Shown here piece by piece: positions 6,880-55,269 of a DNA stretch of 64,000 bases. A program made the position numbers and the translations under genes. Every line of letters starts with the position of its first letter. The first letter of the stretch is position 1. Source of the DNA: Haliotis rubra. Taxonomy: Eukaryota. The stretch is taken from positions 9,052,001-9,116,000 of the forward strand of contig NW_025764891.1 of NCBI RefSeq assembly GCF_003918875.1, given 5' to 3'. Under the pieces are notes generated by a model. That model did no database searches and was not told where the DNA came from. It saw only the letters and a list, made by a program, of their open reading frames with translations.

Positions 6880-9800
6880 TTATGGGAAATAGAGAGCTAG
6901 TTGTATAATGCTAAAAAACGGTTTAACAAGAGGTGCAAACCAATATTCGGAGTTGATATGAATGTATAAACCTCCGTGAGTTTCGGCATAAGTCTGCGCA
7001 ATTAGCATATTTGTCGCCGAATTGAATCCACCAAATGTGTTGTTAAATAGGCGGTAGTAGTCAGTGATGTTCTTGGCCAACGATTCATCCCGCCCCGAGC
7101 CGAAGATTACCGAAGAGTTTCCGAGAAACGTCGGTTCTGGTCCTCGGCTGGCCATCATTGTGTAGTTTGCCTTGGCGCCCTTCACGAATGTCACTCCTAT
7201 ATCCGCCATTGCGTGGTAGGTTCTGTTTATGAAACTACCACAGTCGTTGGAACGAAACCAGAATGTTGAACCTTTAAATAGTACAATGATGTCTGACATT
7301 TTGTCCCAGAAATAACGTTATCTTATTATGAAATATAAACATCTAGAAAACAAAGCCAAATGGAGCCCCGAACAATCCCTAATCTAAGGAGGCAATCTAT
7401 ACTTGCCAAATCATGCTAGACTTGAGTATGACTCCTGTTTAATACATTCTCTAGTGTCTGGGAAACAAACTAGCCTCCAGCAGGATCAGTGATTCACTTG
7501 ATGTCTGGCATGATATGTATTAATTGCATAGATCGATGCTATTGTCAGAAATTGAAGGTCTGGTCCACTCCATAATTTACAGCAAACACACAGCTGGAAT
7601 ATCCGAACCCGGGTCTTCGGCGTGATGAGCGAACGCTTCAACCACTAGGCTAACCCACCGCCCCGGAATATTGCTGATTGAGGACATACCAAAGAAACTT
7701 TGTACGAGACTTGACATCACTTTAGTGTATTAACAGGAGTAATCACCGTGTATTAGATCTATACCCAAAGAACTTATTTAAGCACCACTGATATAGCGCA
7801 CGATTGAATGAGCCCAGATCTTAACCCTTTGGAACATATATGGGACATGACAACAAAGGGATCCTTCTGTACCGAACCTGGCCCAACTGGAAGCTGCTTT
7901 ACACGAGGAATGGCGTATACTGCCCTTTCGGAGGAACAGAAGGCGGGGTATGAGGAGGAGAGTCATATAGTCACATGGAGATTACACTCGGTATTGACCT
8001 TAAATCGTGTAAGACAAGCAAAATGAGCAACATTAAACATTCCAGGGTCATACTTGTACAGACATGATTTTGTATGAAAATCGGTGTTTTTCAAAACGAG
8101 CAATTATCAGACAGGGGGTGCTTAATTAAATTCTTTGTGTATATATTATGAATGAGCATACAAAGATTCTACCGAAAGCCACCCATGCCTGATTTTCGAG
8201 AAGATCCTTACCTGAAGTGTCAAGGATAGTGCTGCCTCCACAGTCAATGTTTGTATCATTTTCATGCTGTAACCAGCCAGCATACTTGTTAAACTGGTTC
8301 CCTGAAACGACCAATAACATTTGACAGTAATTTTCCAGGATAACGATCAGTGAAGATCCGGATTTGAGTTGTTTTCAGCAACCCATGCTTGTCGTTAGAA
8401 GCGACTAACGTGTGGTCAGGCTCGCTGACTTGGTTGGCACATGTCATCGTATTCCAATTGCGTATCTGTTCCTACCAGTCATGTTTGCTGTGACTGACTG
8501 ACTGAGTTTGGTTTTACGCCGGTTTTAGCAATATTCCAGCAATATCACGGCGGCGGACACCAGAAATGGGCTTCACTCATTGTACCCTTGTGGGCATGTT
8601 TGCTATGAGAGACATCTGTCACTTCTATCTGTTCTTACCTGTCCTGTTTGTTATGAGAGACATCTGTCACTTCTATCTAGCCCTACCTGTCCTGTTTGTT
8701 ATGAGAGACATCTGTCACTTCTATCTAGCCCTACCTGTCATGCTTGCTATGAGAGACATCTGTCACTGCTATCTGTTCCTACCTGTCATGTTTGCTATGA
8801 GAGACGTATGTCACTTCTATCTGTTCCTACCTGTCACGTTTACTATGAGAGACATATGTCACTTCTATCTATCCCTACCTGTCATGTTTGCCATGACAGA
8901 CATCTGTCACTTCTATCTGTTCCTACCTGTCTTGTTTCGCTATGAGAGACATCTGTCACTACTATCTGTTCCTACCTGTCATGTTTGCTATGAGAGACAT
9001 CTGTCACTTCTATCTGTTCCTACCTGTCATGTTTACTATGAGAGACATCTGTCACTACTATCTGTTCCTACCTGTCATGTTTGCTATGAGAGACATCTGT
9101 CCGTTGTTCTCGGGCAGGAACTTGTCGCTTATTGCATCAGTGACGCAGAAGCCGCCTTGATTGCACCAGAGAAGACTGTCGTCTTCGAGCACTCTCGCGA
9201 ATGAACATTGACTGATGAGGTACAAACCGTACCAGTCAACGGTGTAGTTGGTGTTGGTGTTGACGTTACGGAAACCTACGGCCACGTGCTTCGGAAACTG
9301 CCAAAGACAAAATATGCAATTTTTCATTTATTCAAGCGGAACAGTTTAACATATCTTCAGTTTTGCTTTTGATAACATGGATAGAACGCCCACCCACCAG
9401 CAATGTCGCAGTGGGGTTTAAAATGATTATTTAATATTATATTGGGGGCACTAAAATGGGTTTATGTATGGGGAATTGAACGCGGATCCCCTTTAGGGAT
9501 ACAGCCGAATCCGACACATTTACCAGTCCAAAGATGGGACACATTAAAAAACCCACACTATTTGTTAATCCTCAAAATGTATGTAGATCCTAAACACTTT
9601 CCTTGTCCCATACTTTTGAAGCGTCAAGGTCTAAGCATGCTCACTACCTAATCAAATATCAGCCGTTTCCCTAGTGTTTAATCTAACCCAAATTTAACAC
9701 TGGTATTCTTACATCAGGCAAATGTAGGCTTGGCGTCAGATCGGAATACATATGGAACAGTTCCACTCGGTCATTATCGGAGAACCTCGGCATACTGATA

Positions 9801-10385
9801 CCATTTGCACAGAATGGTGGGTTGGGCTTCTCACATCTCGGATCTAACGGTGGCCGGTGAGACACTCGCCTGCAACACAGAGTGAGTGAGTGAGTGAGTG
9901 AGTGAGTGAGTGAGTGAGTGAGTGGGTGCTCTTTCAACAGTAGGCCTATTTCATTCAGAGAAATCACGAATATAATCCTGATGTTGTGCAGACAAACATG
10001 GGGTCATATTAGGGAAATAGATGTAATTCGAATGAGTAAGTTTAGTTTTCCGCCGCTTTTTTCAATATTCCCGCAATATCACGGCGGCGATGTAATTCGA
10101 ACCTTCATTACTGAATCATTGTATATTAGGGACACTCCTGTCCAAAACATGTTTTACTTGTTAAGGAAACATTTCTATACCTAAATTTTACATTTTGGAT
10201 AGAAGGGCGCCGTCCTGGCCGATGACGATAAGCTGGATAATTGCTAAGTGTTTTCGTTACACCACAAATATACAACAGAACGGCTAAAATTTCACTTACC
10301 GATGCTCAACTGGCCACTTGCGTTGTTGGGAATATACTTGTGACAGACAGATGATTGTGAGGATACCAAATATCATTGAGGACAT
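6880..10385 (-). CDS. CLN5-like paralogue copy 2, complete, 5 exons, 316 aa
   Basis: Exons 10385-10300, 9869-9713, 9297-9072, 8301-8212 and 7271-6880 total 951 nt with no internal stop and the same intron phases (2,0,1,1) as copy 1. Signal peptide MSSMIFGILTIICLSQVYS; motifs KWPVEHR, KHVAVGF..NYTVDWY, WCNQGGFC, WFRSNDCGSF, EPTFLGN, INSEYWFAP. Confidence 0.92.
7790..8130 (+). mobile_element. Tc1/mariner transposase 3' remnant
   Basis: SPDLNPLEHIWD motif (third acidic residue of the Tc1 DD34E triad) at about 7811-7846; frameshifted afterwards. Confidence 0.75.
8595..9100. repeat. 48-bp minisatellite (about 10 copies) made from the copy 2 exon 3/intron 3 junction
   Basis: Unit ATGAGAGACATCTGTCACTTCTATCTGTTCCTACCTGTCATGTTTGCT; the last unit overlaps exon 3. 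Confidence 0.92.
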
Positions 10386-11102: not shown

Positions 11103-11110
11103 TAAACAAC

Positions 11111-17100: not shown

Positions 17101-19080
17101 GTTTGTTTGACTGGAGACTGACACGTGCCCCTCATGTCGGATTACGTGGTAATCACTAATTTAGTTATCTGGTCTCTTTTGTTAAGTAATTTACTTCCAG
17201 GGACCGTGAGAAGACGTTTAGTTAAGCGGTATTGTTTACTTATCCAAGTTTAGTTAACCAGACTCTAATAGTGATAATTAATGAAGAAATTTGCCGGGAC
17301 CAAAGAATAGTGTTTACTAATCAGGTCAGTTTAGTTAAGCGGTCTTTACTTCTGCGGTTTCCACTGTATCTCTATTTACAGTTACCACTCTGTAACTTCA
17401 GTTGAATTACAGTGTGTGTTTTCACATAGTATTAGAATGGCGATAATCTTCTGTTCTTATCCTTCTCTGTCAGCGTTGTCAGCATATTCACAGTCATGCT
17501 ATAAACACAAGCAGAATGTTGAGTCTCGACACAACAGTGCTTCACGATATATATGTGATGTAACATATCTTATATACTCTTACAAAAAAAGTAGGGGAAC
17601 TTCATTGTTAATTTACAATTGAAAAATTGGGAGATATTTCAGAGTCAGTCAATGTTGATATGATAATAATGAATGTTGTGAGAGTGCATCACCACCTGCA
17701 CTTCGTTACGACCATAGTTGTTTGTACAGTAATCGCTCTTGAAAGATGATTGGTTTATGATGTGAAATTTGCATGTGTACGATTTTCATTTTCAAACCAA
17801 ATAACCCGGCTAGAAACAAACACTTACAAGTGTGTGATGCAAGATGATTGTCAAGATTAATGGTCTACAGTGATTTTTCGACCTTCTTCATGTTCTTGTA
17901 AACCGCCAAAATCAAGAATGACACCCCATGCTCGTGTATGGGGCTACTGCGTTCATCCCATGAGTTGTGTTTAAGGGTGGTGCAAAAGAGAAATGGCGGT
18001 TTGTTCTTAAGATGTTTGTCTTTGAAAAGTTTGTTAATGCTTAAATTTCCTATCCAAATTGAAACTTCAGGTTCCACTACTTTTTTTTAAGAGTATATGT
18101 GGGATCACACTTTATCAGTAAAGTGCAGATTCTAGGGTTTTTGGGGGTTGTTCAATCGCATTCAACTACCTTCGATTTTTTGTAATTGATAAGTTTTATT
18201 ATCTGTGTCTTTATCAGACTGGATTGTCATGCCCGCGGTCACGTCATAAGGTGCAGATAACTCTAAATGACAAAACTGGAAAATGGCGTATTCATTCATT
18301 GCTTGAATGAACATGTAATCAAATGAAAACCATACATTTTGAGCACTCAATCCCTCACTCCCTTGATCCCCAGCTGCTGGACCTGCAGTGGAGAGTGGGT
18401 GTGGCCATTAGTTCCGATGACTGCAAGAGCCTCAACTCCCCCCACCATCACCCTCCTCCTCACCATCGCTGAGACAGGTGGCAGCATCACCAAACACTCC
18501 GTGGAGATGACGCTCACCCAGTTTAGGGTAGGTGCTGCCATCTTGGACAACAAATGAGTTTCTTTGAAATGCTGGGAATTAATTTTATTCATATAACATG
18601 TATAGGTGTTTGAAGCAAACATGTTTAAAACAGCTAGCTGTTGATCTCTGAATTTGACCCTCAGCATGTTTAACATAGATGTTGAAATGCACAAATGATA
18701 CACATCGCACATCACTGATCATGAAGGTGAAATATATTTTTGGCAAACTTGGCAAATTCAGCCATAATGCATTGCTGTGGTAGCCATGTTATCTGGCACC
18801 TCACACAATTGAGATTGTTTTCATGCATTATTCTTCTTAGATGTAGTTAGAATGTATGCTATATTTTGGAGTTTATTATTTATCTTGTTTTGTTATAATA
18901 TGACTTAATATTGAAAATAATTAAAAACAATTTTATGAACTATAAATCCTCAGAGCTATATCTTTCTGTGACAGTAAATATATGTCAGAAATGTGTACAA
19001 CTTTAGGCATTGTCTTCATTCTGTTTCAGAATTTTTCCCGGCAGTTAAAAGAAATGGCAGTGTTGATGGAGACAGTTTGA
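11111..19080 (+). CDS. COMMD6: COMM domain-containing protein 6, 8 exons, about 200 aa (apparent +1 frameshift in exon 7)
   Basis: GT-AG exons 11111-11141, 12154-12212, 14109-14174, 15893-15969, 16269-16380, 16737-16790, 18374-18527 and 19030-19080. C-terminus LLDLQWRVGVAISSDDCKSLNSP/TITLLLTIAETGGSITKHSVEMTLTQFR-NFSRQLKEMAVLMETV matches the COMMD6 COMM domain (DFQWKLGMAVSSDTCRSL...FEMTIPQFQNFYRQFKEIAAVIETV). Total 604 nt, i.e. one extra C in the run at 18438-18443. Confidence 0.88.
11437..11760. mobile_element. MITE with long TIRs, carrying a nested small hAT-like element (11596-11688)
   Basis: TAGTTTCAGATACGCATTCGTGTGGTCGGCGACAG... is inverted at the right end; inner CAGGGGCGGAT...ATCCGCCTATG is flanked by AATATAC. 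Confidence 0.7.
12954..13363. mobile_element. Non-autonomous hAT element inserted in a family B SINE
   Basis: TAGGG...CCCTA ends; 8-bp TSD AGATCAAT (12946-12953 and 13364-13371); the flanks rejoin into SINE sequence. Confidence 0.85.
16000..16215. repeat. Degenerate (GAT)n microsatellite in COMMD6 intron 4
   Basis: Visible GAT-rich tract. Confidence 0.75.
16901..17366. mobile_element. Non-autonomous Tc1/mariner (pogo/Tigger-like) element
   Basis: TIR CAGTGGAAACC...GGTTTCCACTG with TA on both sides. Confidence 0.82.
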
Positions 19081-28216: not shown

Positions 28217-28349
28217 NNNNNNNNNNNNNNNNNNNNNNNNNNNNNNNNNNNNNNNNNNNNNNNNNNNNNNNNNNNNNNNNNNNNNNNNNNNNNNNNNNNN
28301 NNNNNNNNNNNNNNNNNNNNNNNNNNNNNNNNNNNNNNNNNNNNNNNNN
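28217..28349. other. Assembly gap (N run) within an A/C-rich low-complexity tract in the copy 3 3' UTR
   Basis: Run of N; the paralogous A-rich tract at 52260-52500 is resolved. Confidence 0.99.
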
Positions 28350-28494
28350 AAACCAGAACCAAAAAAACAACAAAAGCAACAACAAACAAACGAGAAAAAA
28401 ACCCCACTAAACAAAACCGGCCACAGGTAATTAAGACCGATCTCAAACCAAGATGTTACTGCTGCCACATGAACCTCATCCCCTGTTAAATGGT

Positions 28495-31400
28495 CTACTC
28501 GTACCCTGGTAACGGGACTACCATTTGGGTAAGCGTGTCTGGAGCTCGGGATGTAAACTTCGCATACCAGTAAGCTTCATTGTAATACATGTACAAATAG
28601 TCAATATCTTTGTCGCCCCATGTCTTGAAGAACGAGATCAGCCTCTGGGCCAAGACTGGGTCTCCGTCAACGCCGAATATCTCCGTGTGGTTGCCCAGGT
28701 ATTCAGGCATATATGTGTAGGCGATGGCCAGGTCGTAGGTTGGTTGAAAGTCGGGATAGAATCTCACGCCGAGATCATAAAGGGCTTGAAATGCCCGCTG
28801 AACAAAGCTGCCACAGTCCCAGGACTCCGTCCAGTAGGGACCATCTGGAATGAAGTGTTGGTCTGTTTAGTATCACGCCCCAGAAAACATCCATTTTAGT
28901 GTTTTCATAGAGTCTGTTTAATGTATGAGGTATCGCTAAGGTTTAAGACGTAGATGTTGATAAAGTCTGTTGAGAGAATAAGGGTTCTGGCGAATAATGT
29001 CCCGACGTATAACTAGCTCAGACAATTAAGTTGAAGTATAATACAATGTGATTTTTCAGACTTGTACAGCAACGACCATTTAGTGGAAAATAGTACATTT
29101 AATTACTTGTGTTTTACACATCCTACAACTATATTTTATGCAGTGATTCCTGCGGCTCTCGGGGGCGGTGGTGTAAGCTAGTGGTTAAAGCGTTCGCTCG
29201 TCACGCCGAAGATCCGGGTTCGACTCCCCATATGGGTGCACTGTGTGAGGCGCATTTCTGATGTTGTCCGCCCTGATATTGCTAAAATATTGCAAAAAGC
29301 GGCGTAAAACTATAACCCACGTAGACATGGGACTCTCCGATATAACTCCGAAGAGAATCGCAGTAGGCTTTTCCAGGCGGACCACGTGATCAGTCCACCG
29401 GCGAGGGGCTTGGAGAACCATAGTCTTGTTCGTTACTTTAGTCTGCTATCTGATGCCCATATAGTAAGGTGTTGTTGTATGCTAATTTGGCCCCTCACCA
29501 TTATCTATATCTCCTGGACTCGCGTTTCTGTAAACTTACAATAACCCCTGGATCCACTCCGTGGTTCTGGAGATCCGTGAAGATCCGGGTTAGAAATAAT
29601 CTTCAGCAGCCCATGCTTGTCGTAAGAGGCGACTAACGGGATCGGGTGGTCAGGCTCACTGACTAGGTTGACACATGTCATCGTATCTTAATTGCGTAGA
29701 TCGATGTTCATGCAGTTAATCCCTGGATTGTCTGGTCCAGACTCGATTATTTACAGACCGCCGCCATATAGCTGGAACATTGCTGAGTGCGGTGTTAGAC
29801 AACAAACCAACCAAACCAAAACGTAGTTCTTGCGATCGTACATTATCCACTGCTGATGTTAATTTTCAGTTAAAGCAATTTGCAGAAAATGCAAGGACAA
29901 CACGTCAGTTAAGGTAACGCGTATTACCAAGAAAACCAAGACAGCGCTTGTCTTAATGGACATGATGATGACATGTATCTGATATATATGAAAGTAAGAA
30001 TCACCAGGAATTATGTAGTCAAGAACAGAATCGGAATCAAGGCGCTTCAAATACTTTCTCACAGAAATTCAACCCCTGATGGTAGAGGATGCCCCCCAAC
30101 TTACCTCTGGAACGCATCAGATGTGCCGTGTCGCCATAGATACCAGTACTGTTGTCCCACGTGACCCAGTGTGAGAAAGCATTGAGGAGTTTGCCTGAAA
30201 CGATATTTCTATTAGAAAATAAATAGAATGAGATATTAAGTAGAAAATAAGTGAATATATTATGCTTCAACACTAACACAATCGGATCATTCGGAACTAA
30301 CAAACAATTCTCTGGGAAGTAACATTTCATGCTGTATGCGCAATTTGACTTTTTTCTGAGCAAATGAATCTTGGTGAATCTTGTGGACCTACCGGTTGTC
30401 TTCGCCACCGGATGGCGTACTGCTTTTGGCCCTTGGAAGAAGCTGCTGAAGTTGGAACTGAAGCACGATGCGCCCTGGTTACACCAGAGGAACGAATCAT
30501 CTTCCAGCACCGCGGGTCGGGAGCAGTTTATGATGCTGAACATATGGGCCCAGTCCAAGGTGTAGTAGAAGCCAGTGTTGAGGTTGTGCAGGCCAATGCC
30601 GGCGTGATGCGGCATCTAAAGTGAATTAGCGAAAACGTGAGTTGGTTTGGTTTCATACTCAGATGTCTGCGTTTGCTGAGGTTGGTTTGCTGTTCTCAAC
30701 AATAGTCCAGCTATATGGCAGCGTTCTGTTCTTTTGCAAATCCTGCTATCTACCGAAATCTGCAGGGATGCCGAAATCTAAAGGACAGTTTAATTACCAA
30801 GCAAATGTTGATTTCTGAAGGGGGCTTTGCTTAGACTGCATAGACTCGGGAAGATGGGTGACACATTCACTACATATTGTAATCACATGACCCGACGTTT
30901 TCAGCCGCTGCTCAAATACTTCTTTGCGCGAAGGAGGGGTCAAACAATTTCTCTTTGGACCCACAACACATTAGTTTTTAATTCTTCAACACTTTGCTGA
31001 ACACTTTACCCCGTGAATATAAAACGGCCTCCCACAACTTTCTCCCGGAAAGGGGATCGTGGTTTTACCTGGTGTTGGGTGCTTACGCAGAAGAATTGAT
31101 CTTCAGTAACCCTTGCTTGTCGTAAGAGGCGACTAACGGAATCGGGTGGTCGATGCTCATGATGTTGATCACTGAATTGTCTGGTCCAGACTCGATTATT
31201 TACAGACCGCCGCCATAAAGCTGGAATATTACTGACTGCGGCATAAAACTAAACTCACTCACTCACTTATGCAGAAGAGCTGTTAAATATACATATGTGG
31301 TGTTCATACATCCTTCACAGATTGGGTACAAGGTGTGAATCCCAGTTCTGGTGTCCCCCACCGTGATGTTGCTGGAATATTGCTAAAAGCGGCGTAAAAC

Positions 31401-32591
31401 CAAACTCAGTCAGTCAGTCAGTCAGTCCTTCACAGATGTTCTATAGATAGATGACGTTTAGGCGCTGGACACATCGGATCTGTTCTGTTTCTCTTGGTGA
31501 TGCATTTCTGTCTCCAATCGGAATTAATATGGTACCTATTCTCACCACTTTGTCGATAGATGGAACGCGTCTTCCACTTCCCCTCATGCTGTAGATCACT
31601 ATGGTGTCGTCGTCATCAAAAGTCACCATCGGCACTCCGTCGGAACAGAAGTGTTTGTCCTGTGGGTTTTTACAGCGAGGATCCACTGGTGGTCTACTTT
31701 TAAAGCGTCTGGAAATATTAAAAAAGTGAACATGGTTAAAAAGGTTTGTTTGCGTGTTATTTATTACCGCACTAAGCAATATACCAGTGTTGTGATGGAG
31801 TCCTGTAAATATATTCGTATATATCTTTGACGCGTCAAAGAAACAGTCGATCCTTTTCAGTGTGGACACCGTTAGTCCTCGTTCCAAGCCGATGTAGGAC
31901 GTGCAGAGTTACTCATTAACAATGATTCGAGAATCCGATAAATATGTTTTGACAGACCAGTCGACGCACCCCTGTTTAGATGCCACATTCCCATGAGCCC
32001 ATGTTCTTGCATAACAAAGCATGACCTACAAACGACTAAAGTGGTCCTCGGTAATTCGGTTAGAAGTAACTGAACTGTTGAAACGTTGACGTAACGTGTG
32101 TGTCGTATGTTGTATATGTTGTACATATTATGCATATTTATTTTGCATATGGGCCTATGTCCTTCATGAACTAAACTGATTGATTGATCAGGAGAATTTA
32201 CAGTGAATTGTACCGTTCGGAATAGCGAAATAGTAAATAGTTTCATCTTAAAGTTCTAAACAAGCGAAGAAGATAACACTCTACTATAACAATGGTTTGA
32301 AAAGAAAACTTTCTACTCCCGACACCGATTATACATCCCGGCACCGTGTCTTTAGCTTTGGCGGTACTCCCCTACTCCCTTGGAAATTAGCTCTCCAGGG
32401 AAATCCGAAATATACATTTTAGCCTTCCCGGGACAACGAAAAAATAAATTTTAGCCTTCCCGGCACGACACCTTTCAGAACAACGACTCATGTTTATCTC
32501 ACCTATGTGGCATAACATAGTCAAAACTCCCAGCCTCGACTGTCGTCCAAATGATTCCATGAGAAAACAGTATCAGAGCTGTCAGCAACAT
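28495..32591 (-). CDS. CLN5-like paralogue copy 3, complete, 5 exons, 304 aa
   Basis: Exons 32591-32503 (MLLTALILFSHGIIWTTVEAGSFDYVMPHR, signal peptide), 31708-31546, 30615-30393, 30194-30105 and 28844-28495 total 915 nt, open frame. Motifs HHAGIG..YTLDW, WCNQGASC, WDNSTGIY, WTESWDCGSF, PEYLGNHTEIFG, YYNEAYW. Confidence 0.9.
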
Positions 32592-33223
32592 TGTCGATAT
32601 GAAGATGCAAGGTGACTGACTTTGTTATGTTTCTGTTGAAACAAACAACTCATATATAGTTGGAAGGGATATGAAAGGGAAATTAAATATTAGTTAATTA
32701 GTTCACGGGGCACTTCTCCAATCTGTTGACCCGAACACGCCACTGCATGGGTTTATAGGGCTGAATGATAACGTGAGCCTCACATATAATAATGATACAG
32801 AAACAGTTTGCTGTCGTCACTGCATGATCCCCCGGAGAGTTGCTTGTAGTGACCCGGGCACAACAGTGCGTGACCACGTGATCATGTTGTGGTGTAGTTA
32901 GGTCCATGTAAATTCCTATTTTTTTCAGTAATGTCATTGTAAATATTTTGTTGTCGACGTTACATGATGTCATACGGTTTTAATCTCGGAAACTTACCTA
33001 TCAATTGGGAAAATTGTTTCTTGTTACAAGATAGTAAAATAAACAGGTATCTGTGAGCTTTGCTTAATCTCTATGAAAACAGATCTTCTTCAATAGTTCT
33101 GATTTAATAAAATTGTCACAATGTCACGTTGCATCAGTGACATTGTTTAACATGATTTACACTGTTCTGTTTGTCGTCTGTCAGTGACATTGTTCTGCTC
33201 GAAATTTATTAGTGACATTGTCA

Positions 33224-35895: not shown

Positions 35896-36654
35896 CTATA
35901 TCTATGCCGTTTATTATTGGCATAGCTGCGTTGATAGTTTAAGACTTTCATGGTCACATGTTTGATTAAAAACCTATAATTGTACTGGTTGTCCATCACT
36001 GTTATGGCTGTGCTGGTTGTTTATGATTGTCACGATTATGTTGGTTGTGTTTAATAGTTGCGATAGTTGTCCAAGACAAATGACTGTATTTGACTCTCAT
36101 AGTTGTTGTGTTTGCCTTTTACTGCCATGGTTGCTTGGATGTCCACGATTCCCATCGTTATGTTGCTTATTCATGACCAATGGCTGTGCTCTATGTCAAT
36201 GACTGCCTTAGTTGTGTTGGTTGCCTATGGTTACCGTTGTTGTGTTACTTGTTTATAATTGTTATGTCTGTGTTTGTTACCCATGACTACCATGGCTGTC
36301 CAAGACCAATGGTTGAGCTCCTTGTCCCGATTGTGTTTGTTATCCACCTCTGTCACCTCTGTCACGGTTGCGGTTGCGTTGCGTTGACTGTTCATTTCTA
36401 AGGGCTGTGTTGGTTGTCTATGACTACCATGGTAGTGACGAATGATAATGGTGGTTGTCCGTGATGGTCATTGATGTGCTTCTGTGTTTCGCTTTGTTGT
36501 AAGCTTGTAGACACTCTTTTGGACACAATTGTGTACTAACCGCCCGACCCCTTCAGTCACCTCACAGGACAAGTATAGCTGGGGACCAATTCTAAAGCAA
36601 AATTGAAAACACCAACCACGCTGGATGTAGGAAAAAAAGACACAGGAAAAAACG

Positions 36655-38594: not shown

Positions 38595-41500
38595 CTACTC
38601 ATATCCTGGTAAGGGAACTATCATTTTGGTAAGCGCGTCTGGAGGTTGGGATGTCAGCTTAGCATGCCAATACGCTTCATTGAAATACAGATACATATGG
38701 TGATGGTCTTTCTGGCGCAAATGCTTGAAATACGAAATCAGCCTCTGGGCCAAGACTGGGTCTCCATCAGCGCCGAATATCTCCGTGTGGTTGCCCAGAT
38801 ATTCAGGCCTATGTGTGTAGGCGATGGCCAGATCGTAGGTTGGTTGAAAGTCGGGATAGAATCTCACGCCGAGATCATAGAGTGCTTGAAATGCCCGCTG
38901 AACAAAGCTGCCACAGGTCCAGGTGTCCGTCCAGTAGGGGCCATCTAGAATGAAATGTAGGTGTGATTAGTGCCATGTCCAATAAAAACACATAGTTTGG
39001 TTTTTTATTACGTCGCACTCAGCAACATTCCAGCTCCTTTGCAGCAGTCAGTAAATAATGAAGTCTGGACCAGAAAACCCAGTGATAAACAGCATGAACA
39101 TCGATCTACGCAATTTGGATACGATGACATGTGCCAACCAAGTCAGCAAGCCTGACCACCCGATTCCGTTAGTGGTCTCTACGACAAGCATGGGTTACTG
39201 AAGACCAATTCTAACCCGGATTTTCACGGGTCAGCTCATCTGTGAATCGTGGTAGGTCATGCAAATCGATTTTAAAGGGCATACTTTTGCGTATTGTACT
39301 CGCCATCTGATTGGTTATACCTAGTAGCGTAGCTAATCAAATTGACAAACAGAAATCAAATAAAGGTAACTTGAGATTGTTAGAACCACGTGAATGGATC
39401 TACGGCTTAGAGTAGGATGATGCTCACCTCTGGAACGCATCAGATATGCCGTGTCGCCATAGATACCAGTATTGTTGTCCCACGTGACCCAGTGGGAGAA
39501 AGCACTGATGATTTTGCCTGAAAAGATGTTTCCATTAAAACATTAATCAGGTGAGATAATGAAAAGAATATAACTGGACTTATTCCACCCCTTCACTCAC
39601 TCATTTTCAGGCAGAAAACCAACACATATTGGCACATTATTTATAAGCAATACATCCTTACCTGAGAATATAGTATTTACCACTTCCTCAGTGGTGATGA
39701 AGACCACGTCATTCGTCAGTTATCGCCAAAACCCGGAGAGTTAATATGCTGATGAGGGTCAGGTAACAGAGGTACCATAAGTCACCATAATGGTGATCTA
39801 CGTTAAGTTGATGGCTATCTGAAGCCTTTTTCTGTTTTGAATAGTGCAGTCGCAGTTATGACCTTTTAATGTCCTAATGCTAGTGTATATATATCAACTT
39901 TACGAAGATCACCATAATGGTGACTTTGGGGACTTATGGTGCCTCTGTTTGATTGCGATCTGTTTGGTTGTAACATAATGGTGATCTACGTTAAGTTGAT
40001 TGCTATCTGAAGCCTTTTTCTGTTTTGAATAGTGCAGTCGCAGTTATGACCTTTTAATGTCCTTATGCTAGTGTATATATATCAACTTAACGATGATCAC
40101 CATAATGGTGACTTTGGGGAATTATGGTGCCTCTGTTTGATTGCGATATGTTTGGTTGTAACATAATGGTGATCTACGTTAAGTTGATTGCTATCTGAAG
40201 CCTTTTTCTGTTTTGAATAGTGCAGTCGCAATTATGACCTTTTAATGTCCTTATGCTAGTGTATATATATCAACTTAACGAAGATCACCATAATGGTTAC
40301 TTTGGGGACTTATGGTGCCTCTGTTTGATTGTGATCTGTTTGGTTGGCACCATAATGGTGAGTTGAGAGGAAGGTGATTACTTAATGGATGACGTCTTCT
40401 GTATCATATTATGATGTCACTTTTCAGTAAAAGGTCGTATATCTCACTAAGGCGGCTGTGATGGTCTAGTTACAGACATAATCGTAGTTTCTCGCAGTGC
40501 CTCATTAACTAAGCAGGTATGGGTGACAGTATCGGCGCTATGGTGAATCTCATGGACCTACCAGTTGTCTTCGCCACCGGGTGGCGCTCTGTTCCTGGTC
40601 CCCGGAAGTAGCCGGTAAAGTTGTTACTGAAACACGACGCGCCTTGGTTACACCAGAGCAACGAATCATCCTCCAGCACCGTGGGTCGGCTCCAGTTCAG
40701 AACGCCGAACAGAGGGGACCAGTCCAAGGTGTAGTTGAAGCCAGTGTTGAGGTTGTGCAGGCCCATGCCGGCGTGATGAGGCATCTAAAGTGAATTAGCG
40801 AGTAAGTGTGTGAGTTGGTTTGGTTTCAAACCGTGCTTAGATCAGTGTGTGTTATCTGAACAGGATAGATTGGCCACTGTCAATCATGTGTAGCATCTGG
40901 GTACAGTGCTTTCCCCGATACAAGGTGGTTTACTGGCAATAGAATACCAGTTTGTATCCGTGTCGAACTTTTCGAATTTCGTGTTCGTTCGTAGCGCCAC
41001 CAATGGCGCGTTGCTACTTATGCCCCTTTTATGTCCTTCCTATTAACAACTCAGATTTCACCTGTCATGTTACTTGCATATTGGTCTAACAAAATGGCGG
41101 CTCCCAGTCAAGACGGTCCGATCGAAAATCAAGATCTACAGACTGTATATTGTAATGAAACGCGTATTACTTTGCGAAGTGCATCAACTTACTTTAGCAC
41201 CTTGATTAAAAACATGAAAAATGGGAAAATATCTGTCGACACCTCGTTGACGGGATTCATGTTTTGCAAATCGTGAGGATGTTCAGGGGTCGCGTGTGCC
41301 TATGAGTGAGTGAGTTTTAGTTTTACGCCGCACCCAGCAATATTCCAGCTATACCGGGGCGGGCTTAGGATAGAGTCGACTAACCAATAGTTGCTATCAC
41401 CGATGAGTAACATCTGGATACAGAATTGGTGGTTCGATCGGCCCTTCTTTGTCCTTCCTACTGACCAATCAGATTTCACTTATCATAGTACTTGTATTTG

Positions 41501-43986
41501 CTTCCAACAAATGACGGTCTTGATGTATATTGGAATGAAACGAGTATTACCTTGCTAAGTGCATCAAATAATGTCAACACCTTGATTAATAACATGAACA
41601 AAATGACAAAATATCTGTCGACGTCCATTTGACGGGGCAAATGTTTTCCAATTCTGCTATCAACCGAAATCTGCAGGGATGTCTATTTCGTTTGGTGGCT
41701 TAGCTTGGACTATGCATAGACCCGTTAATCCAGCCAGAACATAACTTTCATGAAGGTCAAGCGAAATTCGGCAATGGTGGAAGATGGACTTCCCCTTGCC
41801 TCGGGAAGATGGGTGACACACTATCGGTGAATATTGTAAACGTCTGGCTCAACGTTTTCAATCGTTTACATAGTGTCGGGTTAAGCGTGAGTGAGTGAGT
41901 TTTACGCCGCACTCAGCAATATTCCAGCTGCATGGAGGCGGTCTGTAAATAATCGAGTCTGGACCAGACAATCCAGTGATCAACAGCATGAGCATCGATC
42001 TTCGCAATTGGGAACCGATGACATGTGTCAACCAAGTCAGCGATCCTGACCACCCGATCCCGATCGCCTTTTATGACAAGCATGGGTTGCTGAAGACCAA
42101 TTCCACCCCGGATCTTCACGGGTGGTGGGGTAAGAAGAGACGGGAGGTGTACATGCGAGCTAAGTGTCATTGAGTATACCCCCTTTACAGAGGCTGTATA
42201 GACACAGGACGTTTAGGCGCTGGACACTCAGAATCTGTCCTGTTTTTTTGTGGATGATGTAATACTGTCCCCAAAACTATTTGCAAGAGGGTTAATCAAC
42301 AATTAATGCAGTGTTCTCACCATTCTGTCGGTGCCTGGGGTATGGCTTCCACTTCCACTCATGCTGTAGATCACTATGATGTCGTCGTCATCAAACGTCG
42401 CCATCGGCTCTCCGCCGAAACAGAAGTGTTTTCCCTGTGCATTTTGACAGCGAGGATCCGATTGTGGTCTGCTTTCAAAGCGTCTGGAAATATTGAACCT
42501 GCATCAGCATGGTCAAGAGGTTTGTTTACTTAAGTATTATTTTATCAGTAAATTATCGAGTCAATCGAAAACTCTTTCGGGGTTATATCATCACTATTAC
42601 TGGCCACCTGATCAGTAATGGTTTCTGGTGACCTGTATTGTAACCCGGATGTTTAACAGGATGAGGGTGGGTTTATAGGTAGGGCTTGGACGACAAAATA
42701 AAGGACCGTTCATAATTTATGGCTTAGGTGTGTGTGTGTGTGTGCGCGTGCGTGCGAGCGTGCGTGCGTGCGTGTGTTGTTGGTGAACGGTCCCTAAGAT
42801 ACTTATAAAATAATCGATTCCCTTCTGTTGATTAGTAAGTCCGATGACCTCCTATTTCATGAGGCAAATAATATATATATTAATAATCACGGATAACCCA
42901 AGCTGCTTGTGAGGTGCCAGAGGGTTAATAGTCACATGACATTTCCCACCTGGTACCTATTTTCTGCTGGGTGAACAGAGGCAATTTTGAACAAACTCAC
43001 TTGCCTAAGGTGAGACCATATGTATCACACGTGCTGTTGTAGGGCAGAACTGAAGTTCCAAGAAACTCTTAGGAGTCAAGCTGCCAATGGTCACCCATCC
43101 AAGAATTCTCCGCGCCCAACGATGCTTATCTTCAACTGATTTGTGAATTTGTGAGAGAGGAGTACTATTTGATAAAAGTCTATTGCAACGAGTTGTTTAA
43201 AATATACGACTGAAGCAAGACAAAAGTAACATTTTTTGTTACCCACCCTAAACTCAGGCCTTCAAATGTATGGATACTTAGCCTAATATCCTTATGGCAG
43301 TAGCGCTTGAATACATAAAACAAAGTTCTTGAATGACATCACCCAGCTTCCTGCTTAATACTGATACGTACTGCGACTACCACAAAAAGATTTCAGACAT
43401 GTCTGTAAATTGGCAAGGCAATGATGATAGTAATGGTGGAAACTAGACATGGTAGGTAGGTCAGGACACTTAGCGAAACCTTAGTACTTCCGGTGACAAA
43501 CTACGTTTCATACCTTTTGGAATGGTCTCATGGTTGCCATGTTTGTCGCAAACATGTCCAAGTAACAGTAAAACCTCGTTATCGTGGACATGGTTCGTCC
43601 TCGTTTTCAGGACGATATAGGACATACAGAATTACTGTTTAACTCGAAAATATGTCTTTGATAGCCCAGTCGAAACACCCCTGTGTGAGATGACACATCC
43701 GAGCATGAACCCAGTTCTTCCATAACAAAACAGGACACACAAACACCACCACTGGACTGGTTCCCGGTAATCCGGTTATCCGAAACATGAAAGTGAACGT
43801 AAACGCTGATCGGGACAATTTACAGTGAACTGTACTGTTCGGAAGAACGCGGTTTCATTGCAAACTGTTTTAGAACAACGACTCATGTTTATCTCACCTG
43901 TGTGGTATAACATAGTCAAAACTCCCAGCCTCGGCTGTCGTCCAAAAGATTTCATGAGAAAACAGTATCAGAGCTGTCAGCAACAT
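38595..43986 (-). CDS. CLN5-like paralogue copy 4, complete, 5 exons, 304 aa
   Basis: Exons 43986-43898, 42483-42321, 40784-40562, 39517-39428 and 38944-38595. Sizes (89,163,223,90,350) are identical to copy 3; frame is open; catalytic His, Asp and Cys (WTDTWTCGSF) are retained. Confidence 0.9.
39765..40345. repeat. 188-bp hairpin-like unit in three tandem copies (intron 3 of copy 4)
   Basis: CATAATGGTGATCTACG at 39786, 39974 and 40162; each unit has inverted ends. Confidence 0.88.
42895..43140 (-). mobile_element. Degenerate 5S-rRNA-derived (SINE3-like) element with a CORE-like body
   Basis: Minus strand GAAGATAAGCATCGTTGGGCGCGG...CTTGGATGGGTGACC resembles the 5S internal promoter (A and C boxes), followed by CCTTAGGCAAGT...TGCCTCTGTTCACCCAGCAGAAAATAGGTACC (CORE-like). 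Confidence 0.6.
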
Positions 43987-45660: not shown

Positions 45661-45663
45661 TTG

Positions 45664-50449: not shown

Positions 50450-51380
50450 GACTAATGGTTGAATTTGTTATCCATCACTGTTATCATTCTGTTAGCTGTC
50501 CAATGCTAATGGTTGTGTTGGCTGCCCTATACTAATGGTTGTGTTGGCTGTCCAATACTAATGGTTGTGTTGGCTGCCCTATACTAATGGTTGTGTTGGC
50601 TGTCCAATACTAATGGTTGTGTTGGCTGTCCAATGCTAATGGTTATGTTGGTTGTCCAATACTAATGGTTGTGTTGGTGGTCCATGACTGACATGATTGT
50701 TAGTTGTCTGAGATTAATGGTTGTGTTGGTTGCCCTATACTAATGGTTGTGTTGGCTATCCAATAATAATGGTTGTGTTGGCTGTCCAAGAATAATGGTT
50801 GTGTTCGCTGTCCAATACTAATGGTTATGTTGGTTGCCCTATACTAATGGTTGTGTTGGCTATCCAATAATAATGGCTGTGTTGGCTGTCCAAGAATAAT
50901 GGTTGTGTTGGCTATCCAATAATAATGGTTGTGTTGGCTGTCAAACACTAATGGTTGTGTTGGCTGTCCAATACTAATGGTTGTGTTGGCTGCCCAATAG
51001 TAATGGTTGTGTTGGCTTCCCTATACTAATGGTTGTATTTGTTATCCATCAATGTCATGGTTCTGTTAGCTGTCCAATACCAATGGTTGTGTTGGCTGCC
51101 CTATACTAATGGTTGTGTTGGCTGTTCAATGCTAATGTTTGTGTTGGATGTCCAATGCTAATGGTTATGTTGGTTGTCCAATGCTAATGGTTGTGTTGGC
51201 TGTCCAATGCTAATGGTTGTGTTGGCTGTCCAATGCTAATGGTTGTGTTGGTTGCCCAATAATAATGGTTGTGTTGACTGTCCAATACTAATAGTTGTGT
51301 TGGTGGTCCATGATTGTGTTAGTTGTCTGAGATTAGTGGTTGTGTTGGCTGCCCGATACTAATGGTTGTGTTGGAGGCCA
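50450..51380. repeat. 26-bp minisatellite within a wider degenerate GTT-rich region (48000-51400)
   Basis: ACTAATGGTTGTGTTGGCTGTCCAAT. Confidence 0.9.
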
Positions 51381-54300
51381 ATGACTGACATTGATGTGCA
51401 CGTGTGTTATGCTGTGTTGCATGTTCGTGTCTACAATTCTGTGCCAACCGTCCGACCCGTTCAGTAGCTTCACAGGGCGGTGAGGTAGCCTGGTAATTAA
51501 AGCGTTCGCTCGTCACGCCGAAGACTCGGGTTCGATTCCCCACATAGGTACAATGTGTGGAGCCCACTTCCGGGGTCCCCCGCCGTGATATTGCTGGAAT
51601 ATTGCTAAAAGCGGCGTGAAACCATACTCACTCACTCACCCAGTCGCTTCACAGGACAAGTACACCTGGGGACGGCAGTGGCACACCATATGAAGACACT
51701 AATTAGGAACAATACGTACAGATATCCAATCAAAGTATTTATTTGTGTATTTGGAACGAGAAAATCCAAACTTGTCAATTTATTGTCTGGGAAATGCCCT
51801 TGATATTAAAACATTTCAATACACAGACGAAGTGACGGCCATTTGATCCAATGCAAGAAGGAGGGTGGAGAGTCGGGCAAGTTCATGTTGGGATACATAA
51901 CTACTGTTCCCTGTTGATGATCCCCGATTTCATTTGGCAATGTAAATGGCAATGGCATAGGAAATCGCCCGGTTTATCCTCACGGTGATGTCTCGGGTTG
52001 TTTCTTTAAGTGGAATTAGAAACTGGTTTGACGAAGAAGAGCAAATTTTATGGATTGAAAATCAACAAGAACATACGTGAAGGATACATGCGTTTATACA
52101 ATTGAGTGTGATTACATTGGTTCTGGATGTTGCGCATCCCTCATTTGAAAACGGTGGCAGCATCTGTGCAGTTCTCAATCCATGAAACCTGTCATTCTCC
52201 CGCTTATTAGTTCAGGAACATCAATATATTTTGCAACAACTCCTCTCCCCCAAAGACAGCAAACAAACCCAAAATAAACAAACAAAACAAAAACAAACGT
52301 CCCTCCCACCACAACCCCTCCCCAAAATAACAAAACAAAATAAACAACAAAACAAAAAACAAAAGAAAACCCCAAAATAAACAAAAAAAACCAAACAAGC
52401 AAAAACAAACAAACAAGCAAAAAAAAAACCTCCAAAACGAACTAAAAAATAACCCACAAACTCCAAACATAACAAACCCAAACAAACCCACAAAAAAATC
52501 TGTTACTGCTGCCACATGAACCTCATCCCCTGTTAAATGGTCTACTCGTACCCTGGTAACGGAACTACCATTTGGGTAAGCGTGTCTGGAGCTCGGGTTG
52601 TTAACTTCGCATACCAGTAAGCTTCATTGTAATACATGTACAAATGGTCAATATCTTTGTTGCCCCATGTCTTGAAGAACGAGATCAGCCTCTGGGCCAA
52701 GACTGGGTCTCCGTCAACGCCGAATATCTCCGTGTGGTTGCCCAGGTATTCAGGCATATATGTGTAGGCGATGGCCAGGTCGTAGGTTGGTTGAAAGTCG
52801 GGATAGAATCTCACGCCGAGATCATAGAGTGCTTGAAATGCCCGCTGAACAAAGCTGCCACAGGTCCAGGTGTCCGTCCAGTAGGGACCATCTGGAATGA
52901 AATGAATATGAGTGTGATTTAAACCCTTTAAAACATATACTGAAGTTTTTCACAGTCAGTAAGAGGCGACGTTAAGGTCGGAAATCTTATAGTTGATAGA
53001 ACTGGGTGGTCGATTATCAAGGGAATATGTGACTTTAAACTGACCAACGACTTAGCGTAAGGTTGAGAAAAGGTCAGGAATATGTGACTCCAACCAACGA
53101 CTAGTGGAGAAAAGGTCAAGAAAAGCCACTGAAAGAAAAATCAGTGGAGTGTATTACTCAGTGCAGATAAGAAATACTTACACTTCTCAGAGAGGTATAC
53201 AAAGTACGTGATCGAAACATTTTGTGAAAGATCTGTGGCTGAGTGGGTTAGATCGCTGTGCTTGCGATTTGGTGCCTCACACTGAGAGTGTGAGTTCGAA
53301 TCCCGGATGGGTCTCAACCCCAAAAGTATTAATCCCAAATATAACGCATTTTGCATTTAAAGATGAACTTCATGAACCTGCATTATTGCTGTGTTCTACA
53401 ACAAACAAAGAGACGGCAATAGTACTAGAATATGTACTTTTCTGAGAAAGTGATATATTTGACCACTTTCTAAATGGCATTCTGTATTCATTCAACAACT
53501 ACATTATATGAAGATTTACGTCTTTGTCCTGAGTTGGAAAAAAACAAATAAAAGGGAGAAGGCAAGGATGTGTCTCTTAGTACCAAATAAACGAAGCCAC
53601 TGACAATTTTAAAAGTCATGAAAACATCCTCTCCATCAATACGCTGTTTGAGGGCATTCTTTTGTGTGTCAGTCATTTTTTCAATCTTGAATTTCTCTCA
53701 AACTCGTCCGTTATGAATGGGACTGGCTGCCATGCTGAGGATGGTTTAACAAACACACTAGCGTAACCAATCAGATTGACAAACATACATCAAGGGTGTA
53801 TAATTTAAGATTGCGACAACCATGGACATATATCCATGGCTTAGGGTAGGTTCACGGAAATGCCACCCCGGATGATAGAGAATGCTCCCCAACTCACCCC
53901 TGGAACGCATCAGATGTACCGAGCCGCCATAGATACCAGTATTGTTGTCCCACGTAACCCAGTCAGAGAAAGCATTGATGATTTTGCCTGAAAAGATGTT
54001 TCCCTTTAAGTATTTTTAATTGGATAAGATAAAAATAACAGGAAATAACTGAATGTATAATACTTCCGAATTACTGCCCATCGTTGACCGGATTTATATA
54101 TTATCTCTGTGGAACATTGCCATGGATTGGTGTATACAAATTTACCATAGTTTCTCGCAGTGCCGCATTAGCTATTTAGGTATTGGTGACAATGGTGAAT
54201 CTTGTGGACCTACCGGTTGTCTTCGCCACTGGATGACGTTCTGCTGGTAGACCCTGGAAGAAACTGTTGAAACTGTCACTGAAGCATGACGCGCCTTGGT

Positions 54301-55269
54301 TACACCAGAGGAACGAATCATCCTCCAGCACCGTAGGTCAGGAGCAGTTTAAGATACCGAACATAGCGTACCAGTCCAAGGTGTAGTTGAAGCCAGTGTT
54401 GAGGTTGTAAAGGCCAATGGCGGCGTGATGAGGCATCTGAAGTGAATTAGCGAGTGTGTGAGTTGGTTTGGTTTTTACACTCAGATGTCTGCTGTCCTAT
54501 ACCTGGGCATTGAGCAGAAAAAAAGACGGTCATTTTGATTTTTTTAAGATGCACCTGGGTGACCTAGGTAAACATCTGGATGACCTTATTATGTATACGT
54601 AGGTGTGTGGTTTCATACTCTGCGTGTGCTAAAGTCGACTAACAGTTGTTATCACCGATGAGTAACGACTGGATATGGAATTTCGTGGTTCTATCTGCAC
54701 TGGTTATTTATGGCCCTTATTTGTCCTTCCTATTGACCAGTCAGATTTCATCGATCATATTACTTGCATTTGCTTCCAACAGAAGTGTTTGAGTTGATTT
54801 GGTTTCATACTCAGAGATTTTTGTGTGCTTAGGATGGAGTCGATGAGTGACGCCTGGATAGTGTGTCACATATCCTCCCGAAACAAAATAACATACAAGT
54901 TTCCACCATTGCAGAACTAGGCTGTAAATCCGTGGCTTAATGGTAGCGCCACCAGTGGCATGTGGCTAGTTATATCATTTCTTTGTCCTTCCTATTGGCC
55001 AATCAGATTTTCCCTATCATATTACTTGCATTAACTACCAACATAATGGCTGCTCCCAGTCAAGAGGAAATGATAAAAAATAAGATATAATATTGTATTG
55101 AAACGGGCATTACCTCTTCAAGTGTCTCATTATTACTTCAGCATCTTTCCTCTAGTAAATACCTATTGACGCTCGTTTGACGTTACACGTATGTTGTATT
55201 TATTGCAATCAACCCAGATATATATATTTATTTCGGGTACTGAAAGGCCACAGGCCTGTAGCACAACAC

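What the first reader, a model, noticed from the sequence alone, without database searches (positions are those of the whole stretch)
6880..54436. Catalytic triad kept but changed: His and Cys conserved, Glu replaced by Asp in all four paralogues
Seen: copy 1 MHDALG...YTMEW puts His and Glu 17 residues apart, as in human H166/E183. Copies 2-5 read KHVAVG..YTVDW or HHA(G/A)(I/M)G..YTLDW, with the same spacing but Asp. The nucleophile Cys (human SYDC) survives as SNDC, SWDC, TWTC and TWTC. Inference: the paralogues are active enzymes, and the shared Asp suggests copies 2-5 descend from one duplicate.
Basis: partly seen in the sequence, partly recalled or inferred. Interest (0 to 1): 0.7.

Follow-up and report, generated by a model that had tools for sequence, protein, structure and literature searches.

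The report
Abalone CLN5 paralogues with Asp triad
An abalone genome carries, next to its normal CLN5 lysosomal lipid-enzyme gene, four fast-evolving extra copies that keep the catalytic Cys and His, swap the supporting Glu for Asp, and have lost other residues that are invariant in the other sampled CLN5 proteins; they are probably enzymes with a changed job, not simple duplicates.

Summary
The window is Haliotis rubra scaffold QXJH01000001.1. It holds five tandem CLN5 (PF15014) genes on the minus strand, each with five exons. Every quoted motif is present.

- **Catalytic residues:** His and the acidic residue are 17 residues apart in all copies. Alignment to human CLN5 (PDB 6R99) maps them to H166, E183 and C280.
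- **Asp is unusual:** Glu183 is invariant in 119 other CLN5 proteins. Asp (codon GAC) occurs only in Haliotis paralogues.
- **The N gap:** it lies in a T/G-rich tract 146 nt beyond the stop codon of copy 3, so it breaks no coding sequence.
  - The paralogues also lost invariant Tyr258, Trp261, Asp167 and Val150.
  - Copies 4 and 5 have Thr at Asp279.
  - A sixth paralogue 0.9 Mb away keeps Glu and groups with copies 3-5. Asp is therefore not a clean shared-derived marker (two changes on the best tree; a single origin is not rejected, AU p 0.17).
  - The assembly gives copy 5 an in-frame TGA, but contigs of three public runs read CGA there.
- **Signs of function:** the paralogues are under purifying selection (dN/dS 0.23-0.59 against 0.08 for the canonical gene). 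Their models superpose on 6R99 at Z 30-33.

Verdict: these are Haliotis-specific, probably neofunctionalised Cys-His-Asp CLN5 relatives. Activity and triad geometry remain untested.

The parts
622..3962 (-). Copy 1, the canonical CLN5 orthologue, partial. Exons 3962-3880, 2898-2721, 1928-1706 and 711-~622; the Cys exon lies off the left end of the window. His codon 1919-1917, Glu codon (GAG) 1868-1866.
   Evidence: Guided model. About 93% identical to the H. rufescens canonical protein P0050 in exon 2. dN/dS 0.08 against H. asinina. Keeps V150, D167, E183, Y258 and W261.
6883..10385 (-). Copy 2, the Asp-type paralogue of subfamily 'c2'; 315 aa, intact. Exons 10385-10300, 9869-9713, 9297-9072, 8301-8212 and 7271-6883. 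His 9288-9286, Asp (GAC) 9237-9235, Cys 7242-7240.
   Evidence: Model with GT-AG introns. Pfam PF15014. 6R99 alignments. Orthologues in H. asinina and H. cracherodii. The NCBI model XP_046582570.1 covers only 136 aa.
28498..32591 (-). Copy 3, Asp-type, subfamily '3-5'; 304 aa. Exons 32591-32503, 31708-31546, 30615-30393, 30194-30105 and 28844-28498. His 30606-30604, Asp 30555-30553, Cys 28815-28813.
   Evidence: The translation equals XP_046582678.1 (P0032) exactly. AlphaFold2 model pLDDT 86, pTM 0.83. 6R99 match: Z 30.3, rmsd 2.5 A over 270 residues.
28217..28349 (.). Assembly gap (N run), in the 3' flank of copy 3.
   Evidence: It lies 146 nt past the stop codon TAG at 28497-28495, inside a T/G-rich low-complexity tract. 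It is not in any exon.
38598..43986 (-). Copy 4, Asp-type; 304 aa, intact. Exons 43986-43898, 42483-42321, 40784-40562, 39517-39428 and 38944-38598. His 40775-40773, Asp 40724-40722, Cys 38915-38913. Thr replaces Asp279, and Trp replaces the Cys at the column of human C193.
   Evidence: Model. The NCBI model XP_046577945.1 (214 aa) starts at a Met after the catalytic His. Site table.
52545..59949 (-). Copy 5, Asp-type. Exons 59949-59858, 58132-57970, 54436-54214, 53987-53898 and 52891-52545. His 54427-54425, Asp 54376-54374, Cys 52862-52860. Retroelement reverse-transcriptase-like ORFs (56918-55383) sit in the intron between exons 2 and 3.
   Evidence: Model (the ATG one codon upstream was seen). 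The exon-5 block is 97% identical to that of copy 3, consistent with gene conversion.
54338..54340 (-). In-frame TGA in the His exon of copy 5 as assembled; copies 3 and 4 have CGA (Arg) here.
   Evidence: Sequence. Every Logan contig covering 54340 reads G on the + strand, which gives CGA: X1 142/142, X3 58.8/58.8, X8 13.9/13.9 depth. The stop is not supported by reads.

Best explanation
The window is a tandem CLN5 gene cluster of the blacklip abalone. It holds one canonical, strongly constrained CLN5 (the lysosomal Cys-His acyl enzyme, described as an S-depalmitoylase and as BMP synthase) and four Haliotis-restricted paralogues in two subfamilies: copy 2, and copies 3-5.

The paralogues keep an N-terminal hydrophobic leader, the whole CLN5 fold, the nucleophile Cys280 and the general base His166. 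They also keep a carboxylate 17 residues after the His, but it is Asp instead of the otherwise invariant Glu.

The surroundings of the active site are rebuilt. Tyr258, Trp261, Asp167 and Val150 are replaced, Ile308 is changed, Asp279 is Thr in copies 4 and 5, and copies 3-5 lack about 18 residues of a C-terminal helix.

The most likely reading is that these are secreted or lysosomal Cys-His-Asp acyl-transfer or acyl-hydrolase enzymes that form a thioester intermediate as CLN5 does. After duplication in the abalone lineage they evolved a different acyl or acceptor specificity (neofunctionalisation).

- **Shown here:** gene structures, residue states, fold, selection, lineage restriction and synteny.
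- **Inferred:** that they are catalytically active, and that their substrate differs.
For: - **Family and residues:** Pfam PF15014 on all exons. H166, position 183 and C280 are mapped by alignment to 6R99.
- **Conservation of the three columns:** His, Cys and Asp/Glu are kept in all 11 Haliotis paralogue sequences from four species. Glu is kept in 119/119 other CLN5 proteins.
- **Gene integrity:** five-exon ORFs with canonical splice sites. The only stop, in copy 5, is contradicted by reads.
- **Selection:**
  - Purifying selection across orthologue pairs: pN/pS 0.27-0.47, p <= 1e-7.
  - The same on the catalytic exons among copies 3-5: p <= 3.5e-4.
  - The N-terminal exons look neutral at about 0.95.
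  - The canonical gene has dN/dS 0.08.
- **Fold:** Z 30.3 and 32.8 to 6R99. In the model His sits on a beta strand, Asp on the next strand, and Cys at the N-terminus of a helix.
- **Conserved cluster:** the order [3-5-type copies]-COMMD-[copy 2 type]-canonical CLN5 recurs in H. asinina and, in part, in H. cracherodii; H. rufescens shows two tandem 3-5-type genes.
- **Lineage restriction:** an exhaustive HMMER search of 1.84 billion representatives found the divergent types only in Haliotis.
- **Remodelled pocket:** copies 3-5 keep only 34 of 81 near-invariant CLN5 columns, and copy 2 keeps 46.
Against: - No activity data exist. No RNA run was found, so expression is unverified.
- Tyr258, which Luebben et al. 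treat as catalytic and whose Y258D variant severely lowered thioesterase activity, is absent from all paralogues. That fits loss of catalysis as well as a change of catalysis.
- Among the near-invariant columns, 20 of 81 survive in all paralogues. Survival of both His and Cys is therefore only mildly improbable by chance, about 0.06.
- The AlphaFold2 models rest on an alignment dominated by canonical CLN5. They cannot prove triad geometry, and their coordinates could not be inspected.
- dN/dS is three to six times that of the canonical gene.
Confidence: 0.6

Rival explanations
1. The paralogues are pseudoenzymes. They keep the CLN5 fold and lipid or ligand binding under selection but no longer turn over substrate. 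The retained Cys, His and Asp are structural leftovers.
For: - Invariant Tyr258, Trp261, Asp167 and Val150 are lost.
- Asp279 is Thr in copies 4 and 5; in human CLN5 the D279N and Y258D variants show severely reduced activity.
- Only 34-46 of 81 near-invariant columns are kept.
- Other CLN5-family members without the triad exist, for example a hagfish entry with R/A/S at these positions.
Against: - Cys280, His166 and a carboxylate at 183 are kept in all 11 sequences across four species, over dS up to ~0.55 within each subfamily.
- The catalytic exons are the most constrained parts.
- Glu to Asp is the most conservative change that keeps a His-orienting carboxylate.
Confidence: 0.25
2. The paralogues are redundant BMP synthases or depalmitoylases with the same substrates as canonical CLN5, that is, simple dosage copies.
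For: They share the fold, leader and dyad. NCBI names them 'BMP synthase CLN5-like'.
Against: - They are only ~30-35% identical to canonical CLN5.
- Pocket residues V150, I164 and I308, which Luebben et al. mutated as the palmitate pocket, are all changed.
- Copies 3-5 lack about 18 residues of a C-terminal helix.
- Their rate of protein evolution is much higher than that of the canonical gene.
Confidence: 0.1
3. The paralogues are decaying pseudogenes.
For: - The assembly shows a TGA in copy 5.
- A retroelement sits in a copy 5 intron.
- The NCBI models of copies 2 and 4 are truncated, and no copy 5 protein turned up in the searches.
Against: - Reads give CGA, not TGA.
- All four ORFs and all splice sites are intact.
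- pN/pS is significantly below 1.
- Orthologues are retained in four species.
Confidence: 0.05

Closest known systems
Human CLN5 (PDB 6R99), the lysosomal Cys-based S-depalmitoylase / bis(monoacylglycero)phosphate synthase
   Same: - Pfam PF15014.
- Whole-chain fold: Z 30-33, rmsd 2.1-2.5 A over 270-281 residues.
- His166 and Cys280 are kept, with a carboxylate at 183 at identical spacing.
- N-terminal leader, the WCNQG..C motif and the N252 sequon are kept.
   Different: - Glu183 is Asp.
- Tyr258 is Gly or Cys, Trp261 is lost, and Asp167 is Ala or Val.
- Pocket residues V150, I164 and I308 are changed.
- Asp279 is Thr in copies 4 and 5.
- The [12 protein letters not shown] motif is lost.
- Copies 3-5 lack ~18 aa of a C-terminal helix.
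- Identity is about 30%.
Canonical Haliotis CLN5 (copy 1 of this window; H. rufescens P0050)
   Same: Same tandem cluster, strand and exon layout. It is the presumed parent of the duplicates; AU does not reject a joint clade (p 0.22).
   Different: The canonical gene keeps all sampled near-invariant residues and has dN/dS 0.08. The paralogues have dN/dS 0.23-0.59 and a rebuilt active-site surround.
Sixth Haliotis paralogue (XP_046582248.1; orthologues in H. cracherodii and H. asinina)
   Same: It belongs to the same divergent clade and is sister to copies 3-5. It shares their C-terminal deletion, Gly at 258, Ala at 167 and the CG[ST]F motif after the nucleophile.
   Different: It keeps Glu (GAG) at 183. 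It lies ~0.9 Mb away on the scaffold, outside the tandem array.
Permuted NlpC/P60 papain-like enzymes (PPPDE/DeSI, HRASLS/TIG3, TseH, Aichivirus 2A)
   Same: Next-best structural matches (Z 5.5-6.7 for TseH and Aichivirus 2A, Z 3.5 for TIG3). They share a Cys at a helix N-terminus and a His on a beta strand. By general knowledge, the third polar residue varies in this superfamily.
   Different: Only the core ~100-130 residues align, at 10-14% identity. CLN5 proteins have large extra domains.

Membership tests
CLN5 family (Pfam PF15014) | A significant match to the family profile above the gathering score | tested here: met
   His and Cys exons of copies 1-4 score 44.7-130 bits against a cut-off of 27. 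The Cys exon of copy 5 scores 51.9 bits; its split His exon scores 26.6 bits.
CLN5 family (Pfam PF15014) | The three-domain CLN5 fold as in PDB 6R99 | tested here: met
   Copy 3 model: Foldseek E 6e-24, TM 0.77/0.81; VIA Z 30.3. Copy-2-type model (H. asinina orthologue): Z 32.8. Caveat: the models were built from an alignment rich in CLN5 sequences.
CLN5 family (Pfam PF15014) | Nucleophile Cys280 and general base His166 | tested here: met
   Both are present in copies 2-5 and in all 11 Haliotis paralogue sequences.
CLN5 family (Pfam PF15014) | Glu183 orienting the His (invariant in 119/119 sampled CLN5 proteins) | tested here: not met
   Asp (GAC) in copies 2-5 and their orthologues. This is a conservative replacement at the same spacing.
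CLN5 family (Pfam PF15014) | Tyr258 of the His-Tyr-Cys centre (Luebben 2022), invariant in 119/119 | tested here: not met
   Gly in copies 3-5 and in the sixth paralogue; Cys in copy 2. The role of Tyr258 is taken from PMC9012467.
CLN5 family (Pfam PF15014) | BMP synthase (transacylase) or S-depalmitoylase activity | not testable with these tools
   This needs recombinant protein and lipid or thioester assays.
   Model coordinates are not exposed. Only secondary-structure placement could be checked: His88 on strand 87-95, Asp105 on strand 101-108, and Cys199 at the start of helix 199-212.
Functional (non-pseudogene) paralogue | Intact ORF, canonical splice sites, and dN/dS significantly below 1 | tested here: met
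   The assembly's TGA in copy 5 is contradicted by reads.
Functional (non-pseudogene) paralogue | Evidence of transcription and correct splicing | tested here: inconclusive
   No RNA run held the stretch. Only contigs of DNA-like or unknown kind were laid.

The most novel reading that the evidence does not exclude
The abalone lineage has evolved a new subfamily of CLN5-fold acyl enzymes. They work with a Cys-His-Asp centre and without the otherwise invariant Tyr258 and Trp261, and they act on a substrate other than lysophosphatidylglycerol or palmitoyl-thioesters. If so, this is a natural experiment showing which CLN5 active-site residues are dispensable for catalysis and which set specificity.
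Probability: 0.3. Interest if true: 0.55.

Novelty: new variant of a known kind. Interest (0 to 1): 0.42.

Why it matters
CLN5 is a Batten-disease gene whose chemistry (thioesterase versus BMP synthase) was worked out only recently, and it is usually a single-copy, very conserved gene.

A lineage-specific expansion keeps the Cys-His dyad under selection but replaces Glu183, Tyr258, Trp261 and the acyl-pocket residues. That gives natural variants for asking which residues are needed for acyl-enzyme formation and which fix substrate choice.

For abalone biology it flags a small, fast-evolving, probably secreted or lysosomal enzyme family of unknown role.

It also corrects the record. Three of the four paralogue genes are truncated or missing in the public annotation, and the stop codon in copy 5 is probably an assembly error.

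Tried and rejected
- **Copy 5 as a pseudogene:** I first read the in-frame TGA of copy 5 (54340-54338) as a pseudogene mark. I rejected this after contigs of three runs read CGA there.
- **Asp as a shared-derived marker of copies 2-5:** not upheld. The Glu-bearing sixth paralogue nests inside the clade, although a single Asp clade cannot be rejected.
- **Long-branch check:** with one divergent group left out, the other attaches elsewhere in the unresolved molluscan part of the tree. The 100/99 support for their union may therefore be partly long-branch attraction.
- searches failed because the coordinates were given high-to-low, and were repeated correctly. The first splice-model attempts missed short exons and were redone.
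- **Literature:** no paper mentions CLN5 together with Haliotis.
Full report
**What is in the window.**
- The window has 41% G+C and one N run, at 28217-28349.
- Six-frame reading plus tblastn with abalone proteins shows five tandem CLN5 genes on the minus strand, each with five exons: a signal-peptide exon, an N-terminal exon, a His/acid exon, a short exon carrying human position 258, and a Cys exon.
- Splice-refined models give intact ORFs with GT-AG introns for copy 2 (315 aa), copy 3 (304 aa), copy 4 (304 aa) and copy 5.
- Copy 1 is cut by the window edge after its fourth exon.
- Copy 3 translates exactly to XP_046582678.1 of Haliotis rubra. It sits at about 9.07-9.09 Mb of QXJH01000001.1, so the window is blacklip abalone.
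- The public models of copy 2 (136 aa, without the Cys exon) and copy 4 (214 aa, starting after the catalytic His) are truncated. No protein for copy 5 turned up.

**The gap.** The N run lies 146 nt downstream of the copy 3 stop codon (TAG, 28497-28495). It sits in a T/G-rich low-complexity tract that also follows copy 5. It touches no exon, and nothing in the finding depends on continuity across it. I did not fill it.

**The observation.**
- phmmer against PDB chains aligns the His exon of copy 2 to human CLN5 residues 166-238, and its Cys exon to 269-391. That places the His on H166, the Asp on E183 and the Cys on C280.
- All exons match Pfam PF15014.
- The His-to-acid spacing is 17 residues in every copy. 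Asp is GAC in all Asp-type genes, and Glu is GAG in the canonical gene and in the sixth paralogue.
- In an alignment with 119 other CLN5 proteins from vertebrates to rotifers, the columns read H 118/119, E 119/119 and C 119/119.
- Asp was seen only in Haliotis paralogues.

- *More of the active site has changed.*
  - Luebben et al. (PMC9012467) name His166, Cys280 and Tyr258 as the catalytic centre, with Glu183 positioning the His. They show that Y258D, D279N and the pocket mutants V150S, I164S and I308S all severely lower thioesterase activity.
  - In the paralogues Tyr258 (119/119 elsewhere) is Gly in copies 3-5 and Cys in copy 2.
  - Trp261 (119/119) is Ala, Val or Ser. Asp167 (118/119) is Ala or Val. 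Val150 is Gly or deleted. Ile164 and Ile308 are changed. Asp279 is Thr in copies 4 and 5.
  - Of 81 columns that are at least 95% conserved in 121 non-paralogue CLN5 proteins, copies 3-5 keep 34 and copy 2 keeps 46. Twenty survive in all 11 paralogue sequences, and H166 and C280 are among them.
  - Copies 3-5 also lack about 18 residues before the FYxYYN strand, as another first-stage note says.
- *Copy 5 carries an in-frame TGA in the assembly.*
  - The TGA is at 54340-54338, where copies 3 and 4 have CGA.
  - Logan contigs of four public runs were laid on 52300-55300. Every contig covering 54340 reads G on the + strand, which gives CGA. This holds in the same organism (X1, depth 142 of 142) and in two other organisms (X3, X8).
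  - The stop is therefore most likely a consensus error or a rare allele. X1 may be the assembly's own sample, and contigs drop rare variants.

**Are they functional genes?**
- Coding sequences of orthologues were extracted from H. asinina, H. cracherodii and H. rufescens loci.
- dN/dS is 0.08 for the canonical gene, 0.23-0.31 for copy 2 and 0.28-0.59 for the copy 3-5 type.
- pN/pS is significantly below 1 for orthologue pairs (p <= 1e-7). It is also below 1 for the His and Cys exons among copies 3, 4 and 5 (p <= 3.5e-4). Exons 1-2 look neutral at 0.94-0.99.
- The exon-5 block of copies 3 and 5 is 97% identical, against 75-81% in the other exons. That points to gene conversion.
- No RNA run was found, so transcription is untested.

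**Fold.**
- AlphaFold2 models of copy 3 (pLDDT 86, pTM 0.83) and of the H. asinina orthologue of copy 2 (pLDDT 89, pTM 0.85) were built.
- They match 6R99 at Foldseek E 6e-24 (copy 3 model) and VIA Z 30.3 and 32.8, with rmsd 2.5 and 2.1 A over 270 and 281 residues.
- The next hits are NlpC/P60-type proteins: TseH and Aichivirus 2A at Z about 5.5-6.7, and TIG3 at Z 3.5.
- In the copy 3 model His88 lies on a strand, Asp105 on the next strand, and Cys199 at the start of a helix.
The alignments behind the models are dominated by canonical CLN5.

**History.**
- An exhaustive profile search of 1.84 billion representatives, plus two indexed searches, found the divergent types only in Haliotis: H. rubra, H. 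asinina, H. rufescens and H. cracherodii.
- Gene order is conserved. In H. asinina it runs [3-5-type copies]-COMM-domain gene on the other strand-[copy 2 type]-canonical CLN5, then an AIF-1/EF-hand gene. H. cracherodii shows the COMM-domain gene, copy 2 type and canonical CLN5 in the same order, and H. rufescens shows two tandem 3-5-type genes.
- A careful ML tree joins all divergent paralogues (100/99). Inside that clade it places a sixth, Glu-bearing paralogue as sister to copies 3-5 (94/87). That paralogue is XP_046582248.1, about 0.9 Mb away, and it shares their deletion.
- Asp then needs two changes: two gains, or a gain and a reversal. A tree with all Asp-bearers together is not rejected (AU p 0.167).
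- Placing the whole divergent clade next to the Haliotis canonical gene is also not rejected (p 0.22).
- When one divergent group is left out, the other attaches elsewhere in the unresolved molluscan region. Long-branch attraction may therefore add to the support.
- Shared derived states, such as Gly281 after the nucleophile and the loss of Tyr258, Trp261 and Asp167, still favour a common origin.

**Verdict.**
- The paralogues are real, constrained, Haliotis-specific CLN5 relatives. They keep a Cys-His-carboxylate centre but have a rebuilt pocket.
- The most likely mechanism is a CLN5-like acyl-Cys enzyme with changed specificity (about 0.6). A non-catalytic binding protein is the main rival (about 0.25).
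- No paper links CLN5 to abalone. The BMP synthase role of CLN5 is taken from the literature listed.

Noticed in passing
window 54338-54340: The assembly has TGA in the copy 5 His exon, but contigs of three public runs, including one from the same organism, read CGA (Arg). This is probably a consensus error or a rare allele.
   Followed up: yes
window 28454-28857 and 52501-52904: The last exon plus short flanks of copies 3 and 5 are 97% identical, while their other exons are 75-81% identical. The pattern fits gene conversion limited to about 400 bp.
   Followed up: partly
window 8595-9101: A 48-bp tandem repeat (10.5 copies, 91% matches) starts inside the 3' end of copy 2 exon 3. The unit contains the last exon codons plus the GTAGGA donor, so the donor site is reiterated through intron 3. 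The read-through frame hits a stop.
   Followed up: no
window ~18495-19080, + strand (L002:23512-24097): A COMM-domain gene (200-aa product) lies on the opposite strand between copy 2 and copy 3. The same gene sits between the two paralogue types in H. asinina, and next to the copy 2 type in H. cracherodii.
   Followed up: partly
window 55383-56918, minus strand: Reverse-transcriptase-like ORFs of a retroelement lie inside the long intron between exons 2 and 3 of copy 5. SINE-like repeats (~220 bp, 83-91% identical) are scattered through the window.
   Followed up: no
window 33219-35901, 25095-27131, 50490-51374, 61381-62671: Large minisatellite arrays lie between the genes, with units of 56, 52, 26 and 40 bp and 34-48 copies. 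They create long spurious ORFs in several frames.
   Followed up: no
P0028 (UniRef entry, Myxine glutinosa CLN5) and P0015 (ENA fragment): The hagfish entry has Arg, Ala and Ser at the His166, Glu183 and Cys280 columns. P0015 also has Ser at the Cys column. So CLN5-family members without the Cys nucleophile exist elsewhere.
   Followed up: no
L001 (QXJH01000001.1:8157785-8181685): A sixth divergent CLN5 paralogue of H. rubra has Glu at 183 and the motif ANDC. It lies ~0.9 Mb from the cluster, and its public model (219 aa) starts just before the catalytic His.
   Followed up: partly
window 52864, 52865, 52871: Some contigs laid on the copy 5 Cys motif read the copy 3 state (SWDC instead of TWTC). 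This is either cross-mapping of the 97%-identical copy 3 exon or allelic gene conversion, and the two could not be told apart.
   Followed up: no
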